A stretch of 64,000 bases of DNA from NCBI RefSeq assembly GCF_030144855.1, contig NC_082714.1:95232001-95296000 (forward strand), in the 5' to 3' direction. A program made the position numbers and the translations under genes. The notes below the pieces were generated by a model that saw nothing but the letters and a program-made list of their open reading frames with translations, was not told where the DNA came from and did no database searches. Source of the DNA: Hypanus sabinus (lineage: Eukaryota). Shown in pieces: positions 485-51,698 of this stretch; position 1 is the stretch's first letter, and each line of letters opens with the position of its first letter.

Positions 485-959
485 ACTTGGGATCTGCAGT
501 AAACACACACACACACACACCAGTGCAACTTCACTGAGCGTGGCTCTGCAGAATGCGCCAAAATTGCTGTTCAAGCTGTAAGGACAGCCTCAATATACCA
601 GGATGTCCCTTTAGAACAGTGAGAAGGAGGAATTTCTTTAACCAGAGGGTGGAATTCATTGCCAAGGATGGCTGTGGTGGCCAAGTCATTGAGTATATTT
701 ATAGTGGAGGTTGATAGGCTCTTGATTAGTCAGGGTGTCAAAGGTTACAGGGAGAAGGCAGGAGAATGGAGTTGAGAGGGATAATAGATTGGGAAAACGC
801 GATGGGCAAATGGCTGAATTCTGCTCCTATTTGTCTTATGTTCTTCAAGTCTTCAACAATCCAGAGTGGGATTCACACCCACAGCCAGGTGTCCAAAGCG
901 GGGAGAAAAGGCAGGGATTCAAACAAGGTTCAGGCAATACCATCTCACTCAGCACTCAC

Positions 960-1116: not shown

Positions 1117-1433
1117 GCCCCCTCCACACTGTCCCATCATACACTCCTGAAGACGGACACAAAGTGAAACTCCTTCTACACACACTCCAAGGGTCAGACA
1201 CAGAGTGAAGCTCTCTCCACACTGTCCCATCACACATTCCTGGGTCAAACAGAGTGAAGTTCCCTCTACACCATCCCATCACACACTCCTGGGATCAAAT
1301 ACAGGGTGAAGGATCCCTCTACACCATTCCATCACACACTCCTGGGATCAAATACAGGGTGAAGATCCCTCTACACCATTCCATCACACATTCCTGGGGT
1401 CAAACACAGAATGAAGTTTCCTCTACACCATCC
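1117..1433. repeat. Minisatellite, ~51-bp unit, about 6-7 copies
   Basis: Recurring unit ccctctacaccatcccatcacacactcctgggatcaaatacagggtgaag. About two reverse-complement units occur at ~41960-42080. Confidence 0.9.
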
Positions 1434-1588: not shown

Positions 1589-1764
1589 CAGGGAGCCCAT
1601 CAGTCCTTTGCTCTGCGAGGTGATGACCCGAAGGTCCGGCTTTCGGCTGTTAACAAGTGGCAGCTGTGCGACAGGGGGCGGCGGCGACTTTGGCGGCATC
1701 ACCTTGCCCAGACTAGTGGTGGTGAGCAGTCCGGGCGAGGACCTCTGGTTCACGTAACCGTTCC
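1589..1764 (-). CDS. MEF2D: MEF2D coding exon 6 (contains the SRKPDLRVIT docking-type motif)
   Basis: 176 nt encoding (G)NGYVNQRSSPGLLTTTSLGKVMPPKSPPPPVAQLPLVNSRKPDLRVITSQSKGLMGSL. Acceptor ctgttttgttgcag|, donor CTG|GTAAGT, phase 1/0. Confidence 0.95.
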
Positions 1765-1872
1765 CTGCAACAAAACAGGGCGGGGAACAATAAGTCACAA
1801 GTAGTCAACTACCCCAGGTCAGAGGAGGGTGCAGATACTGGAGGCGCTCAGGAGGCTGAGCAGCATCTGATG

Positions 1873-2217
1873 AAGTCACAACCTGCACTAGGATAGAGTG
1901 GGAAGTACAAAGGTCATGACCTTGCACCAGGATAGAGTGGGGAGTATAAAGGTCATGACCTCCACCAAGACAGCTGGGAGTTCAAAGGTCATGATCCTGC
2001 CCTTGGACAGAGTGGGGAGTATAAAGATCATGACCTCGCACCAGGACAGAGTAGAGAGTAGAAAGGTCATGACCCTGCACTCGGACAGAGCAAGGAGTAT
2101 AAAGGTCATGACCTTGCACCAGGATAGAGTGGGGAGTATAAAGGTCATGACCTCCACCAAGACAGCTGGGAGTTCAAAGGTCATGATCCTGCCCTTGGAC
2201 AGAGTGGGGAGTATAAA
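1873..2217. repeat. Minisatellite, 39/36-bp unit, about 9 copies, with 192-bp higher-order period
   Basis: AGGTCATGACCT-like cores start at 1911, 1950, 1986, 2025, 2064, 2103, 2142 and 2178. The units starting at 1911 recur 192 bp later. Confidence 0.95.
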
Positions 2218-2862
2218 GAGACAACCAGTGTAAAGAGGGGAACGGCAGGCGTGACACAGGAGAGAACTACCTCCACCCATGATTCTTCAAACACTCTTCC
2301 AACAGGGGTTAAGAAAACCTTGTCGCTTAGTGTGTTGAAGACCAGTAGATAACACAGTACACAGTATAGTACAGCACAGTACAAGCCCTTTAGCCCACGA
2401 TGTAACCTACTCCAAGATCAATCTAACCTTTCCCTCCCACACAGCTCTCCATTTTACTATCATCCATGTGTCTATCTACGGTCGCTTGGATTTCCGTTAC
2501 CATCACTCCAGCAGTATGCTCAATGCACTCACAACTCTGTTAAACAACCTACCTCTGACATCACCCCTATACTTTCCTCCAATCACCTTTCAATTATACC
2601 CTCTCATACTGGCTAGGTAACAGTTCAAAGTAAGTTCATTATCAAAGTACATACATGTCACCATATTCAACCGTGAGATTTGTTTCCCTAAAAACATACT
2701 CAGTAAATCCAAGAAACATAATAGAATTAATGAAAGACCGCACCCAATACGACAGACAAACAATGCGCAAAAGACAAACTGTGCAAATCCAAAAGAAAAT
2801 AATAATAATAAATAAATATAGAGAACATGAGATGAAGAGCCCTTGAAAGTGAGTCCATAGGT

Positions 2863-5800
2863 CAGGTTTTCTCAAACGGAGTTCTGCTTAACACTAGGTT
2901 GCTACGGGTTCCAAGGGAGATTGTGATTTTAAAAAATAAACATCGTTTTTTGAACTTCGCACAGGTCGCAATGCCAGCGCTCGCACTGGTGGGCAGTGAC
3001 TGAGCAGTCCCGTTAGCAATCTCGTTAGAGGTCTCTCAGCCTGGTATGGCAGTGCGTAATACGATGGTGTTTATTTGGCTGAGTCCACTCTCAATTTTTG
3101 AAGCAAGATATGGAAGGCCATTGATAGTTGGAGAGTGCTGTATTGCGGTGGGGGGGGAGGGAGGAGGACGGGAGGCTGATAAAGAGCATGAAGTTCCTTT
3201 TCCAAGCATTGAATGGACTCACTTGCTCAACATGGGCTCTTGATGTCAACTTCTCCCTCCTCAACTTCCCCTTATGTGCTGTCAACTAACTTATGGAAGA
3301 AAACACACTCTACCGGTTTAGTGGAAAATTGGAGGTCATCATCAATAAAATGGCCCAGGAAGCGAGTCATTTAGTAGCAGAACTTATAACCCAGAAAAGG
3401 AGAAGTCACACAGTTGGTGAGAACCTAATAATGCCAGCATGTAAAATTATAGTGGGTAAAATGCTAAGACAAGATAGAGTACAAGAAATTGACAAGGTTT
3501 CACTGTCAAACAGTACGAACAGTCGATGTGTTGATGACATGTCGCATGACGTTGAAGAGGTTTTATGTGATAAACTAAAATAACACCAACTTCTCAATCC
3601 AGGTTGATAAGTCAACAGATTTCATCAATAAATGTCATGATGTAACATTTGTAAGATTTGTAAATGATAGTGAAATTCAAGAAAACTTTTTTTGTTGGCA
3701 AGAGCTGCCTGAAACAAGCGAAGACCAAGGCATATTTAAAGTTTGGAAACAAACAGTCTGTCCTGGAGGAACTGTGTTGGCATCTGTGCTGATTGTGCCA
3801 ATCAATAGTTCATGAGAGGATTCATCTCTCTTGTAAAAAAGAAAATCATGACATTGTCACAACATACTGCTTTCTTCACAAAGAGAGGTGCTGATGTTAA
3901 AAACTCAGAGGAAATGAAAACAATTCAGGATGATGCTACAAAAAAGATTAACTTTATTAAACGACTAGTTCACTCGAGAGTGTTTAAAAACCCGTGAACC
4001 TGGACAAAGAGCACAACAATCTCCTGCTACACACAGAAATCTGGTGGCTTAGCAGGGAAAGAGTTTTCAACAGGGTGCTTGAGCTAAAAAGCGAATTGCA
4101 GGAGTACTTTCAAGAAAATAGTAGGCCAGATTTTGCTGGGTGCTTTGAAACTGAAGAAAAGCTACAGAAACTAGCCTACTTAGCAGAAATTTTTCATCAT
4201 TATGAACCAGCTGAACAAGTCTCTACAAGGCCCTGGAGAAAATACAAATACAACTACAAAAAAAAAATCAACAAAATGGAGATTTATACAGTGCAAAACA
4301 AATGTGTCTAATATATAATTCATAATAATAAGGAAAAAGCACCCAAAATAAAATCATATAAAGTTAGTATCCTCCCTACCCTCCCACTACAGGTCAACCA
4401 CTTCAATGTGTAAAAGAAAAATTAATCAGAGCATTCAACCCCAAAGAGTTGTAAATATATATTAAAAAAAAGAAAATATACCAAAACTATAATGTAATAC
4501 ATATCAATAAAATCCGTAAAACTGACAGGAAAAAAAGCTGAAAGTAAGGGATTATAGTACAAAAAAAAAGAATAAACTTAATCTAAAGAGGAGTTACGAA
4601 AGTATTCAAGAAAAGGTCCCCACACCTTATGAAACCTTATGTCCGAATTGAGAAGTGAATAATGAATCTCTTCAAGGTCTAAACAGGACATAATATCACT
4701 AAGCCATTGAGCATGAGTGGGTGGGGCAACATCTCTCCACCTGAGAAGAACCATCTAGCCAAAAGAGAGGCAAAAGATAATATTCGCCGTTTAGTCGGAC
4801 TCAAATGCATGTCTACTTCTCCTAAGGTGCCGAAAAGAGCAACCAGAGGGTTAGGTTCTATGGGGCAATTAACAACATGAGATAAAGATAAAAAAAACCT
4901 CTCTCCGGATTTTCTTCTGACAAGAACAAGCCCAGTACATATGAATAAGAGAAGCCCTGCCCCCTTTACACTTGTCACAGACTGGACTAATGTCAGGATA
5001 AAACCGCGATAATTTAGTTTTAGACATATGAGCCCTACGTATAAACTTTAAACTGCAAAATTTGCAATCTTAACTGCAAAAACTGCAAGATATTTCTTTA
5101 TCTGAATTTGGGATTCAATTCTTAAGTCAGTTAAAAAGAAACCTTGAAATGTTTTCACTGCTGCTTAGGCTTGAGAGTGAGGAAGGATCAGAAAGTCTCG
5201 AGTCTTCTTGTAAACCACCTGGAAGAACTGCAAAACAAAACTGAACAGTATTTTTCCTCCCTTTCAACAATGGGTGAAGGACCCTTTCTCTGAATCTTCT
5301 GCTCAGCCTGAGAATTTGACTTTGAGAGAAGAGGAAGCACTTTGCGAGCTGCAAACTGATCATGCACTCAAGGTAAGATTTACTGAGCTGTTGCTAGACA
5401 AGTTCTGGATTTCTGTGAAAGAAGAGTATCCTGCCATTCATCAGAAAGCAATGAATCTATTGCTGCAGTTGTCAACTTTTTACAAGTGTGAGCAAGCTTT
5501 TTCTTGTTTAATAAGCATCAAGAGAAAGGATAGAAATCGTCTCATTTCAGTTGAAGGTGAAATCCGTGTGTGCTTAACTCAAGTTCGACCCAGAATTGAG
5601 TATTTTTGCAGCAAAAATCAAGTGCAGGTTTCACAGGCTAGGCTGATATTTGAGCCTGATCACATCACTTAGTAAGAAAAAGTTTTTTCAAAATCTTGCA
5701 TAAAATTGTGTCTCAGGCTATATTTTTATTTATATTGCTTTGGCTTTTGGTTTTTAGTAACTTTACCATTCAACATTGTCAAAAATGTTCATGTTATACA

Positions 5801-41342: not shown

Positions 41343-43332
41343 TCATCTCTGTTCTAAATGGATGTCCTTCTATTCTGAGGCTATGCCCTCTAGCCCTAGA
41401 CTCCCCCAATGCAGTTAACAACCTCTCCGTCAACTCTATCTCGGCCTTTCAATTTAGGAGTTTCTGTGCTGCTGTTTGATGAGCAGCCCAATCCCCATTC
41501 CAAATACTTACTCACTCCATCAGCTGCAGGACTGAGGGATAAGGCCCTTCACTGAGACAGCACAGCCACTGACACAGTCAGCTCTAACGATAGAGCCTTC
41601 AGCAGACAACTAGCACCTCACTATCTCCTTATCCCAAATACACAACCAGCCAACCCCAGGTAAGGGTTACGAGTTAGAACAGATCAATGACTCAGGAGAG
41701 CCACAGAGTGGGATGTTAAAGACTGGGAGGCTTCTCCACAGGCACCAGAGAATCAGGCAAATGCCCACTGCAGAACCTCACGTATAGACACAGATATTAC
41801 GAACCATTCACGTTTCCAGAAAGTCAAAGCGATGAAGTCCAGGACCATGGGAATGGAAACAACGTTCAGCTCGTTGAAAATCACAGACAACCTGTAACAC
41901 AAAGAGATTCACCTTCACCGGAGAGCTCCAGATTGAAACAGACTGTGACAGTCTAGGGATTTCCACTGTGTCTAATCTGTAATATCCCTGTCCTGGAGTG
42001 TGTGATGGGATGGCATGGAGGGAGCTCCACTTTGTGTCTGACTCTGGGAGTGTGTGGTGGAACGCTGTGGAGGGATACACTAAGACCCTATGGTGCTCAG
42101 CAGATCCACAGATGGCCAGAGCACTCAGAGCTCAAGGGCATGCAGCTGATGCCCACATTGTGTGCCCTCTAAGCCTCTGAACACACACACACTGGACAGG
42201 CTGAAAAGGAATGTCCTCATCTCACCAGACAGCGACAATCCCTCTCCATCAGGTGCCCGAAGAGCTGGAGCGTGGGACTGAAGTCTGACCAGTTGACAAG
42301 TACCCCTTCAACACTATTACAGAACCAGCTATAGGATTGGATTCCACCCACCCACCCCCACCAATGTCTCCCCATGACCATGTGGGTTTCCCTCAAGTGC
42401 TCCAGTCTCCTCCCACATTCCAAAGATGTACCATTTAGGGTTAGTGAGTTGTGGACATGCCAGAACCATCGCGACACTTGCAAGGTGCCCCAGCACAAAG
42501 TTCCTTATTTTGATTTGATGCAAACAACACATTTTGCTGAATGGTCCAACGTACATGTGACAATAAAGCTAATCTCAATATCTTTTATACATAAGAACAA
42601 GTTGCAGTCTCACACATCCCAATTTTGGGACATGGACTTGAGCAGGCTCTAGAAATGGTAGGAAACTTGGCACGCTGCACCTGTTGCTTGGGAGTACTCC
42701 GTACAGAACTCTGCAGCCCAAGGTCCCACTAAGAGAGGTCAGGCTTCTCCGGATCAAAGGCAGAACAGCCACAGTGTATCTGGACAGTAACTGTGGGCAA
42801 GGAAGTAAAAGGTGTGCAGAAAGGAGGTTTCACTTCCATGCTGTGTGGAATGGCTGAGGGGGCTTTCCAAACTATGCATTGGCTCTTGAGGAAGGTTTTG
42901 GGTAAACAATTCTAGCCCGAGAAAATCAGGAGCATCTCATACGTGCATTCCCTCAATACCCAGTGATGTGGTTCTCCCTCTAGCACCCAAGACATCCCAA
43001 GGTCCATCCAACGTGACGGCACCTCTCTTCCACCAGTTGGATGGGTCACTGACTGTGGGTAAGCCCAAGAAGTCCCGATAAAAAGGCTGACAATTCCCTC
43101 AGATCATCATAGTTGATGCCTGCCACCAGAAACATTCTAAAGGTTGTGCACCGATGGAAGAATGTATTTGTTACTGTAGGAATGCTTTACAGATATCTCT
43201 GCAGTGTCCAAAGTCTGAGTCACCACTCAGGGACAGATACACAGAAATAACTGACCAACAAAAAGACTGCATCAGGAGCAGAGACCAGTGCGGACAGCTT
43301 CACTCACCTCAACGCTGAACTGATTCACAACA

Positions 43333-49320: not shown

Positions 49321-51698
49321 GTGCTGTTCAAGCGATATTTCCCTTAGCCTAAGGGTGAGGATCAGGCAACAGGAGTGAATGAGTGACTGCAGTAAGCGAG
49401 CCGAGAAAGGGTGATGGGCGAGGCGGGCCAGTGGGTGAAGGTGCTGCCTCACAGCGCCCGTGACATTCCTGTGCCTTTACACATCTCTGCATGGGTCTCC
49501 TTCGGGTACAAGAGATGCTTAAGAATGTGCACAGAGTGGCAGGATATGAACCACATGCAGACAGAGGGGATAGATGTCATTAGCTCAATACAACAGTGCA
49601 GGTTGAAAGCAACATTCCTCCATGGTTCTAGTTTTTTCCCATAGTCTAAAGATGTTTGCTCTGGTGGATTAATGGGCCCTGTTATGTAAAGGAATGGAAG
49701 AATGTGAGGGGAATTGTTTGAAATGATGGGAGGGGGTATAATCAGTATAGGATTAATACAAAGGGTACGATGGTTGGCACACAAGTCGGGAGAATATACA
49801 CCAGTCATCGAGGGGTCAGCAGTGGAAAGGGTGCACAGCTCAGAGGATCTAAATTGGGCCCAACATACTGATGCAATTTCAAATGAAGGCACACCTAATA
49901 TTTCATTAGGAGTCTGAGGAGATTTAGTACATCACCAAAAACTAGTAAATTCTATGGGCCTATTATGGTGAGCAATCTGATTGGTTGCATCACCATCTGG
50001 AAAAAGCTGCAGAGGGTTGTAAACTCTGCCACCTCCATCATGGGCACTCACCTCCCCACCATCAAGAACATCTTTAAAGAGCAATACCTCAAGAAGGCAA
50101 CATCAATCATGAAGGACCCTCACCACCCAAGACATGGCCTCTCCTCAGTACTACTAATAGGAAGAAAGCTACAGGAGCCTACAGACCCACAATCAATAAA
50201 TAGAAACAGCTTCTTCCCATCTGCCATCAGATTTCCAAGTGGTCAATGAACACTACATCACTCTTTTACTCCCTTTTTATAGCTTCGTAGCTTGTAGTGT
50301 GTTTTTCTGTTTTGAACTGTATTACTGCCACAAAACAACAAATTTCATGACTTATGTTAGGAATAATAAACCTGATTCTGATTCTGGACCTGATGGGCTG
50401 AAGGGACTGCTTCGCTCTGGGAACAATTGAGTTAGTTCAAGACAAGCGAAGACAGAATTTGGGCAACCAGCTGTTAATTCCTCCGAATCACTTGTCTGAA
50501 CCCTTGTCACTATTTTGAAGAGCAGATGAACTCAGTGTCAGGAAGGGAGAGGAATGATTGTGAATGATATCAGACATCTATGGGAGAGAGTATATTGATG
50601 AATCATCAGACAATGCAAAGAGCCTCCCACATGCCGATGAAACAACGGTCATAACCCCTTCAGCCCAAACCAACAGTGATCCAAGAAAACACGCTCAACA
50701 CCCTCTAGGCATTTCTGCAGGGCAGATGACAGCAATAAGCAATTTGTCGTCACTGTTAACATATTGAACTCTTCCCTTGGTTTTCCACCCCACCTCCTTT
50801 GGAATTTGCCAACTCTGGTGTAAAGCCCATTTAGAGTACCACACTCAGTGTGGGCATTCCAACCTGTTCATATCCCCAATTCCTGAGCAGACACGCTAGT
50901 CCAAGCTCCATTACCAAAGAGGCAAGCCAAGCAGAGGAAACAACATAGAACACTACAGTGCAATACAGGCCCTTTGGTCAACAATGTTGTGCCAACCTTT
51001 TAATCTAGTCCAAGATCAACCTAACCCTTCCCTCCCACATAGCCCCTCCATTTTTCTATCATCCAAGAGCTTCTTAAATGTCCCTAATGTATCTGCCTCT
51101 ACCACCATCTCTGGCAGGTGCTCCACACATCTACCAGTCTCTGTTTAAAAACTCTTACCTCTCACGTACTTCCATACCATCACCTTACAATTACGCACTC
51201 TTGTATTAGCCATTTCTGCCCTGGGAAAAAGTCTTCTGCTGTTGATTTTTCACCAGAAGATGGTGAATCTGTGGAATTCATTGCCACAGACGGCTATGGA
51301 GGCCAAATCATTGGGCCTATTTAAAGCGGAGATTTACAGATTCTTGATTAGTAACGATGACAAAAGTTACAGGGAGAAAGAAGGAGAAGGGGATTGAGAG
51401 GGAAAATAAATCAGCCAATAAAGGCAGAGCAGACTTGATGGACTCAATAGCTTAATCCTGATCCTATGTATTTTAATGAACCGGATTGTGATCCTGGACT
51501 TGTTGGGCCGGTGCCTACTTCTATCTGGTGTGACCAAGAGGAGACAGGTCAGTACAATGGGTTATTTCAAGAGAAGCAAATACAGAATATGGCAACAGCA
51601 GGTAATACCTAGGAGAAGGCCACCTAGTCTCTGAAATGGTTTTGAACCACCACACTTGTCTATTCAAGTTCAAATTTATTGTCATCTGACTGTACATA

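What the first reader, a model, noticed from the sequence alone, without database searches (positions are those of the whole stretch)
1873..2217. Intronic minisatellite that is a dense array of nuclear-receptor response elements
Seen: a 39/36-bp tandem repeat ~110-450 bp from the acceptor of coding exon 6. It holds four perfect AGGTCATGACCT (1911, 1950, 2103, 2142), four near-perfect variants, seven AAAGGTCA (1909, 1948, 1984, 2062, 2101, 2140, 2176) and two AGTTCA-A-AGGTCA (1979, 2171). Known: AGGTCATGACCT is the idealised IR0/TREpal bound by TR, RAR/RXR and COUP-TF; AAAGGTCA is the NR4A NBRE; the 13-mer is a DR1; and NR4A1 is a classic MEF2D target gene. Inference: the array resembles a natural multimerised hormone-response reporter. 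It could be a copy-number-tunable enhancer giving thyroid/retinoid input or NR4A feedback onto MEF2D.
Basis: partly seen in the sequence, partly recalled or inferred. Interest (0 to 1): 0.72.

Follow-up and report, generated by a model that had tools for sequence, protein, structure and literature searches.

The report
Intronic minisatellite carrying nuclear-receptor motifs
A 39-base tandem repeat in an intron of a stingray MEF2D-like gene really does carry textbook hormone-receptor binding motifs, but they all descend from one repeated unit and show no clear sign of being preserved, so it is most likely an ordinary repeat.

Summary

The motif counts are not independent. Segment 1908-2026 is repeated exactly at 2100-2218. 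There are only five full independent units: two perfect palindromes, four AAAGGTCA and one DR1.

The array is not a dispersed satellite. It has no other copy in the window. In assembled contigs of four ray sequencing runs it is covered by one or two contigs at single-copy depth, while a transposon 110 bp away reaches 10^4-10^5.

One run matches with no mismatch, so it is the same species. Three related species carry an orthologous array with different internal joints. It is 9-10% diverged, no less than the flanking intron at 4-8%.

Within the array, AAAGGTCATGA varies little (p about 0.03-0.05). The second half-site varies as much as the spacer. Half-site density outside the array is at chance.

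Most likely this is a neutral, locus-specific minisatellite. It would probably bind receptors in vitro, but enhancer function is untested and not suggested by conservation. The scan has described two other minisatellites in this genome, one of them intronic. Interest is low.

The parts
1881..2218 (.). Minisatellite array: about 8.8 units of 39 bp (two of 36 bp), consensus CCTGCACCAGGACAGAGTGGGGAGTATAAAGGTCATGAC
   Evidence: Tandem Repeats Finder; unit table
1872..1910 (.). Degenerate first unit (AAGTCACAACCT in place of AGGTCATGACCT), the faded left edge of the array
   Evidence: Read directly from the sequence
1908..2026 (.). First copy of an exactly duplicated 119-bp segment (three units). 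With 2027-2099 it forms a 192-bp higher-order period
   Evidence: Offset-192 identity; blastn self-match. A 222-base contig in run X5 traverses the 192-bp higher-order period and overlaps itself by 30 bases
2100..2218 (.). Second copy of the exact 119-bp duplication. It holds the palindromes at 2103 and 2142 and the DR1 at 2171
1911..1922 (.). Perfect IR0 palindrome AGGTCATGACCT (independent copy; 2103-2114 is its duplicate)
1950..1961 (.). Perfect IR0 palindrome AGGTCATGACCT (independent copy; 2142-2153 is its duplicate)
1979..1991 (+). DR1-like AGTTCAAAGGTCA in the 36-bp variant unit, made from AGTATA by two substitutions (2171-2183 is its duplicate)
1589..1764 (-). Sixth coding exon of the MEF2D-like gene; acceptor AG at 1765-1766, donor GT at 1587-1588
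   Evidence: Translation; tblastn exon map
2219..2329 (.). Single-copy intron flank between the array and the transposon. Its depth is the yardstick for single copy
   Evidence: depth 10.1 / 13.5 / 5.5 in X2 / X14 / X28
2330..2870 (.). Very high-copy dispersed element (SINE- or LINE-like) that is not part of the array
   Evidence: summed depth 10^4 to 6x10^5 and over 100 contigs; other copies in the window

Best explanation
This is a locus-specific, neutrally evolving intronic minisatellite (a VNTR-type array). One 39-bp unit that happened to contain AAAGGTCATGACC was amplified in place by replication slippage or unequal exchange. It has since decayed to about 80% identity between units, with fading edges. 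In this species it recently gained an exact 119-bp (three-unit) duplication at a 192-bp higher-order period.

The density of nuclear-receptor motifs follows automatically from repeating that one unit. The self-complementary GGTCATGACC core lets neighbouring units pair with each other in single-stranded DNA, which may favour slippage and so the array's own instability. The array would very probably bind receptor DNA-binding domains in vitro, but no dedicated regulatory role is indicated.

Shown: the array anatomy, the duplication, single-locus status, and presence with a different structure in related species. Inferred: the slippage mechanism and neutrality.
For: - Array and unit structure.
- Exact duplication 1908-2026 = 2100-2218. 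It is supported by independent reads: the 222-base contig in run X5 reads 2023-2100 then 1909-2052 with no mismatch, traversing the 192-bp higher-order period and overlapping itself by 30 bases. I read that as a closed 192-bp cycle, assuming k = 31.
- Single-copy depth over the array in four runs: 3.7, 10.1, 13.5-14.5 and 5.5, equal to the unique flank, against 10^4-10^5 for the neighbouring transposon.
- No other copy or proto-unit in the 64 kb. No relatives of the array's open reading frames.
- Orthologous arrays in organisms B, H and L have different joints and diverge by 10/106 and 15/155. The flank diverges by 8/221, 14/174 and 14/207.
- Position 1995, which breaks one palindrome, is T here and in L and G in B, so that site is imperfect in all three.
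- Variation within the array: right half-site p = 0.42, whole palindrome p = 0.069.
- AGGTCA in the window: 56 against 49.9 +/- 6.8 expected.
- Single-strand fold pairs adjacent palindromes, z = -3.7.
- Earlier reports of this scan describe other minisatellites in this genome, one of them intronic.
Against: - The AAAGGTCATGA block has 1 variant cell in 55, against 25 in 140 elsewhere (a-priori AAAGGTCA window p = 0.026, scan p = 0.053). Some constraint on the extended left half-site is therefore possible.
- The array has persisted at the same place in at least four ray species.
- Perfect consensus sites in an intron of a transcription-factor gene may be occupied in vivo whatever their origin.
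- No chromatin, binding or reporter data exist to show inactivity.
- The cross-species comparison rests on contig summaries, not on base-by-base alignments.
Confidence: 0.65

Rival explanations
1. The array is a working cis-regulatory element of MEF2D, either enhancer or silencer. It would be occupied by nuclear receptors: monomeric NR4A, ERR or ROR on TAAAGGTCA; RXR-containing dimers or COUP-TF on the IR0 palindrome and the DR1. Its strength would depend on unit number.
For: - Perfect consensus motifs at the stated places.
- AGGTCATGACCT is the IR0 used in reporters and responds to RXR with 9-cis-retinoic acid. AAAGGTCA is the NBRE.
- The array is locus-specific, not a dispersed satellite, and is retained in four species with differing structure.
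- The AAAGGTCATGA block is the least variable part of the unit.
- There is precedent that repeats can seed receptor elements that are bound in vivo: Alu-DR2.
Against: - Only two perfect palindromes, four NBRE-like sites and one DR1 are independent of the recent duplication.
- The right half-site is as variable as the spacer.
- The array is at least as diverged between species as the flanks. An imperfect palindrome has stayed imperfect in three species.
- IR0 elements are described as rare in nature, and the reporter was not induced by T3 alone.
- Consensus-like receptor sites far outnumber occupied ones (abstract of PMC9249314).
- There are no functional data of any kind.
Confidence: 0.2
2. 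The array acts at the RNA level. In the gene's sense strand each unit reads UCAUGACCUUUAUACUCCCCACUCUAUCCUGGUGCAAGG. That puts nine pyrimidine-rich tracts 108-452 nt upstream of the 3' splice site. They could bind pyrimidine- or C-rich-tract proteins (PTB or PCBP type) and modulate use of exon 6.
For: Position relative to the acceptor. Pyrimidine-rich sense-strand unit read directly from the sequence. Inference only.
Against: No canonical UCUU or CUCUCU clusters. By my count the exon is 176 nt, so skipping it would shift the frame, and it encodes a conserved MEF2 segment. No RNA run holding the region was found. An earlier report on another intronic minisatellite of this genome found normal splicing.
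Confidence: 0.05
3. The array is a fragment of a transposable element or of a genome-wide satellite family, so its motifs reflect that element's sequence rather than this locus.
For: Transposons abut it: a high-copy element at 2330-2870 and a low-copy repeat of about 10 contigs overlapping about 1800-1897. Another minisatellite in this genome grew from a Penelope-like element. Low-coverage runs of organism A held 35-69% of the array's words but little of the flanks.
Against: One or two contigs per run at single-copy depth over the array at 85% identity or more. No other copy in the window. The over-representation in low-coverage runs is explained by the twofold multiplicity of the duplicated 119 bp. 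A metagenome scan gave one chance hit without tandem structure.
Confidence: 0.04

Closest known systems
Intronic minisatellites / VNTRs, including those whose units bind transcription factors (from my own knowledge: HRAS1 and insulin VNTRs, the SLC6A4 intron-2 VNTR)
   Same: A tandem array of 10-100-bp units at a single locus, in an intron, with variant units, decayed edges, a higher-order duplication and differences in structure between related species. The unit contains a recognisable transcription-factor motif.
   Different: No polymorphism data, binding data or expression association exist here. The motif is a nuclear-receptor palindrome rather than the G-rich cores typical of classical minisatellites.
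Synthetic multimerised hormone-response reporters (TREpal / IR0 constructs, NBRE multimers)
   Same: The identical 12-mer AGGTCATGACCT used as the IR0 element (PMC4074170), and AAAGGTCA as the NBRE (PMC12313389), repeated head to tail at short spacing.
   Different: Only 4 of 9 junctions are perfect, and 2 of those are recent copies. The element is natural, intronic and untested. In the cited reporter study IR0 was not induced by T3 alone.
Repeat-borne nuclear-receptor elements: Alu-DR2 retinoic acid response elements (PMC1785376)
   Same: A repetitive sequence multiplies consensus RGKTCA half-site arrangements near genes. Some such sites are bound in vivo.
   Different: Alu elements spread sites across the genome by transposition. 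Here one locus multiplied a site in tandem, and there is no ChIP evidence.
GGAA-microsatellite response elements of EWS-FLI, and short tandem repeats that tune transcription-factor binding (from my own knowledge)
   Same: The concept of a tandem array whose unit number sets regulatory strength.
   Different: Those are microsatellites with demonstrated length-dependent binding. Here the unit is 39 bp and nothing has been demonstrated.

Membership tests
Minisatellite (VNTR-type tandem repeat) | Head-to-tail copies of a unit of about 10-100 bp | tested here: met
   Period 39, 8.8 copies, score 373; unit alignment
Minisatellite (VNTR-type tandem repeat) | Confined to a locus rather than a dispersed or megabase satellite | tested here: met
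   No other copy in the window; single-copy depth and one or two contigs per run in four runs
Minisatellite (VNTR-type tandem repeat) | Variable unit number between individuals | tested here: inconclusive
   Array joints differ between related species. Within the species only contigs were available, and the 192-bp cycle contig does not give a copy number
Nuclear-receptor response element (IR0 / NBRE / DR1) | Sequence matches the consensus half-site arrangement | tested here: met
   definitions from PMC4074170, PMC12313389 and PMC1785376
Nuclear-receptor response element (IR0 / NBRE / DR1) | Motif conserved beyond the neutral rate, within the array and between species | tested here: inconclusive
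   Palindrome p = 0.069, AAAGGTCA p = 0.026, right half p = 0.42. The whole array is at least as diverged as the flank between species. Base-level orthologous alignment was not obtainable
Nuclear-receptor response element (IR0 / NBRE / DR1) | Receptor binding, and ligand- or receptor-dependent transcriptional response | not testable with these tools
   Needs EMSA, ChIP and reporter assays
Intronic enhancer | Open chromatin or active histone marks in expressing tissue | not testable with these tools
   No epigenomic data accessible
Transposon-derived satellite | The unit is present in dispersed copies of a mobile element | tested here: not met

The most novel reading that the evidence does not exclude
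The array is a lineage-specific, unit-number-dependent nuclear-receptor input into MEF2D. Monomeric orphan receptors (NR4A, ERR, ROR) on the well-kept TAAAGGTCA block, or RXR-type dimers on the palindromes, would occupy it in muscle, heart or neurons. Expansions such as the recent 119-bp duplication would change MEF2D output between stingray species or individuals. That would make it a natural counterpart of a multimerised hormone-response reporter.
Probability: 0.12. Interest if true: 0.5.

Novelty: new member of a known kind. Interest (0 to 1): 0.2.

Why it matters
If the array were shown to be receptor-bound and dependent on unit number, it would be a clear natural example of a minisatellite acting as a tunable hormone-response element in a developmental transcription-factor gene. 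It would also be a rare natural IR0 site. As the evidence stands, it mainly illustrates that a tandem repeat multiplies whatever motif its founding unit contained. Motif density inside a repeat should therefore not be read as evidence of function without conservation or binding data.

Tried and rejected
- Dispersed-satellite or transposon origin. Rejected by single-copy contig depth in four runs and by the absence of further copies in the window.
- Fetching orthologous or paralogous DNA through the array's open reading frames. The minus-frame 130-aa and 52-aa translations gave no relatives, so no base-level cross-species alignment could be made. The third protein search was not spent on the plus frame.
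- Metagenome scan for a 20-mer of the unit. It gave one unrelated contig with a single chance match and no tandem repeat.
- Earlier findings by place, words, sequence and relatives. Nothing like this unit turned up elsewhere in the genome. The operators note that blanks by sequence or relatives mean nothing.
- Rfam on the whole window. No RNA family matched.
- Reading the over-representation of the array in low-coverage runs of organism A as high copy number. Rejected. The duplicated 119 bp has twofold word multiplicity, the laid contig has depth 3.7, and listed runs are selected for holding the query.
- Relatedness of this array to the 52-bp array at 1179-1433. They share only a short ACAGAGTG stretch, and no blastn match links them.
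- Literature search for a described minisatellite made of nuclear-receptor elements. None was found in the held library.

Full report
**1. What is there**

Reading 1500-2700 and running Tandem Repeats Finder shows a tandem array at 1882-2218 with period 39, 8.8 copies, 76% matches and score 373.
- AGGTCATGACCT at 1911, 1950, 2103 and 2142.
- AAAGGTCA at 1909, 1948, 1984, 2062, 2101, 2140 and 2176.
- AGTTCAAAGGTCA at 1979 and 2171.

None of these three patterns occurs elsewhere in the 64 kb. A 20-mer of the unit with up to three mismatches hits eight times, all in the array, against 0.00 expected.

The minus strand of 1589-1764 translates to NGYVNQRSSPGLL...SRKPDLRVITSQSKGLMGSL. It places six coding blocks at 39166-39107, 33014-32805, 19914-19765, 19273-19079, 18710-18645 and 1765-1586.

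The array therefore lies in a 16.9-kb intron, 108-452 bp upstream of the acceptor (AG at 1765-1766) of the sixth coding exon. The RVITSQ.KGLM stretch is what I recall as typical of MEF2D rather than MEF2A or MEF2C. That assignment rests on my memory and was not tested.

**2. The sites are not independent**

Self-comparison at offset 192 shows that 1908-2026 is identical to 2100-2218, 119 bp without a mismatch. The array is thus five full distinct units (starting at 1911, 1950, 1986, 2025 and 2064), a degenerate first unit at 1872, and a recent exact copy of three units.

Independent of that duplication there are two perfect palindromes, four AAAGGTCA and one DR1. The DR1 arises in the 36-bp variant unit, where AGTATA became AGTTCA. 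The edges of the array fade into degenerate copies: AAGTCACAACCT on the left and AAAGAGACAACCAG on the right.

All sites ultimately descend from one founding unit. Outside the array the half-site is at chance frequency, with 56 AGGTCA on both strands of the window against 49.9 +/- 6.8 in shuffles.

**3. Is it a dispersed satellite?**

No. The unit has no other copy or recognisable proto-unit in the window.

Two searches of public runs and one laying of contigs from four runs on 1790-3400 at 85% identity or more gave these results:
- The array is covered by one or two contigs per run. Depths are 3.7 (X5), 10.1 (X2), 13.5-14.5 (X14) and 5.5 (X28).
- This equals the unique flank at 2222-2329, which has depth 10.1, 13.5 and 5.5 in X2, X14 and X28.
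- The element at 2330-2870, only about 110 bp away, sums to 10^4 to 6x10^5 with more than 100 contigs.
- A collapsed high-copy satellite would have shown up as high depth. It did not.

The X5 contig (organism A) matches with no mismatch. It reads 2023-2100 followed by 1909-2052. Its length is 222 = 192 + 30, which I read as a closed 192-bp cycle in the assembly graph, assuming k = 31. Reads of that run therefore support the duplication structure of the window. Whether the run comes from a different individual than the assembly cannot be told, and the contig does not give a copy number.

The high share of array words in the small runs of organism A (0.35-0.69), against 0.18 or less for the 1.6-kb stretch, is explained by the twofold multiplicity of the duplicated part. 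The listed runs are also selected for holding the query. I do not read it as high copy number.

**4. Related species**

Organisms B, H and L each carry one contig joining array-like sequence to the orthologous right flank:
- B: 1950-2055 joined to 2170-2390.
- L: 1989-2143, nine other bases, then 2226-2399.
- H: the same 2143-to-2226 joint, with AGATGACCA between.

About four units (155 bp) are alignable in each, and the joints differ from the window. The array is therefore older than these species splits, and its internal structure has changed.

Divergence in the array is 10/106 (B) and 15/155 (L). In the flank it is 8/221 (B), 14/174 (L) and 14/207 (H). The array as a whole is therefore not more conserved than the neighbouring intron.

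Only a few differing positions were printed: 1930, 2015 and 2016 in the spacer, and 1995. Position 1995 is the base that spoils the palindrome at 1986. It is T here and in L and G in B, so that palindrome is imperfect in all three. A full base-by-base comparison was not possible because the tool lists only part of the differences and its cap is one call.

**5. Variation within the array**

Across the five full independent units, the 12 palindrome columns carry 4 variant cells of 60, against 22 of 135 in the spacer. Column-permutation tests gave:

| Window tested | p |
|---|---|
| Whole palindrome (a priori) | 0.069 |
| AAAGGTCA (a priori) | 0.026 |
| Right half-site TGACCT | 0.42 |
| Best 11-column window, AAAGGTCATGA (scan) | 0.053 |

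This is a weak hint that the left extended half-site and the central TCATGA are kept. There is none that the palindrome as such is kept.

With five units that share ancestry, this does not separate three possibilities: selection for binding, a mutational or conversion bias, and chance. Conserved cores are a familiar feature of minisatellites.

**6. A mechanistic note on the repeat itself**

Folded as single-stranded DNA, the array pairs the palindromes of neighbouring units into 12-bp stems with 27-nt loops. The free energy is -52.5 kcal/mol, with z = -3.7 against shuffles.

It is an inference that such inter-unit pairing favours slippage. It could help explain both the array's growth and the retention of the self-complementary core.

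**7. What the motifs mean**

- AGGTCATGACCT is exactly the IR0 element used in reporters. The same paper calls IR0 the least characterised thyroid-response arrangement, with very few natural examples. Its IR0 reporter responded to RXR with 9-cis-retinoic acid but not to T3 alone (PMC4074170).
- AAAGGTCA is the NBRE, and a MEF2D-Nur77 link is in the literature (PMC12313389).
- From my own knowledge, TAAAGGTCA also fits the ERR element TNAAGGTCA and the A/T-rich extension of ROR sites.
- Read from the unit table, TATAAAG occurs in five units and is TATA-like.

The unit therefore supports several readings. Repeats can seed receptor elements that are bound in vivo, as with Alu-DR2 (PMC1785376). 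Consensus-like sites nevertheless greatly outnumber occupied ones (abstract of PMC9249314).

I found no described minisatellite built of nuclear-receptor elements in the held library.

**8. Verdict**

The best explanation (about 0.65) is a neutral, locus-specific intronic minisatellite whose founding unit happened to contain a receptor palindrome.

An RNA-level role (about 0.05) and a transposon or satellite origin (about 0.04) are minor or rejected.

Earlier reports of this scan describe other minisatellites in the same stingray genome. One is an intronic 38-bp array judged harmless, and one grew from a Penelope-like element. This kind of feature is therefore common here. That did not set my score.

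The decisive tests are a base-level alignment of orthologous arrays across batoids, chromatin and ChIP data, and reporter assays with half-site mutants and graded unit numbers.

Noticed in passing
window 1179-1433 (extending to about 1109): A second minisatellite with a 52-bp unit, 4.9 copies and 85% matches. It lies in the intron on the other side of exon 6, about 155-410 bp past its donor. A single related unit lies at 41992-42076 on the opposite strand, so this unit probably comes from a dispersed element.
   Followed up: partly
window 2330-2870: Very high-copy dispersed element present in all four ray read sets (summed contig depth 10^4 to 6x10^5, over 100 contigs). Partial copies lie at about 16628, 20164, 20600, 44076 and 51001 in the window. 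It begins about 110 bp from the array but is not part of it.
   Followed up: partly
window 581-840: Another dispersed repeat with at least a dozen 70-88% copies across the window on both strands, for example at 51271, 17217, 46576, 58603 and 63077.
   Followed up: no
window about 1800-1897: The stretch between the exon 6 acceptor and the array matches about 10 contigs per run in three related species, most with A instead of C at 1845. It is therefore a low-copy repeat. The 54-bp bins cannot show whether it reaches into the first, degenerate unit of the array and so could have supplied the founding unit.
   Followed up: no
window 1881-2218: By direct reading of the unit table, five units carry TATAAAG, a TATA-box-like heptamer, directly upstream of the receptor half-site. 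From my own knowledge, TAAAGGTCA also fits ERR and ROR extended half-sites. The motif reading of the unit is not unique.
   Followed up: partly
L001:931-953 (metagenome contig Ga0210040_10046648): A single 23-base identity to the unit (GGAGTATAAAGGTCATGACCTGC) in an unrelated contig without any tandem repeat. I take it as a chance match.
   Followed up: yes
window 1888-2280 (-) and 1898-2233 (+): Most units are 39 bp, a multiple of three, and the two 36-bp units also keep the frame. One frame on each strand therefore stays open through the whole array (130 and 111 codons). The minus frame was searched, as 130-aa and 52-aa queries, and found no protein relatives. These are not genes.
   Followed up: yes
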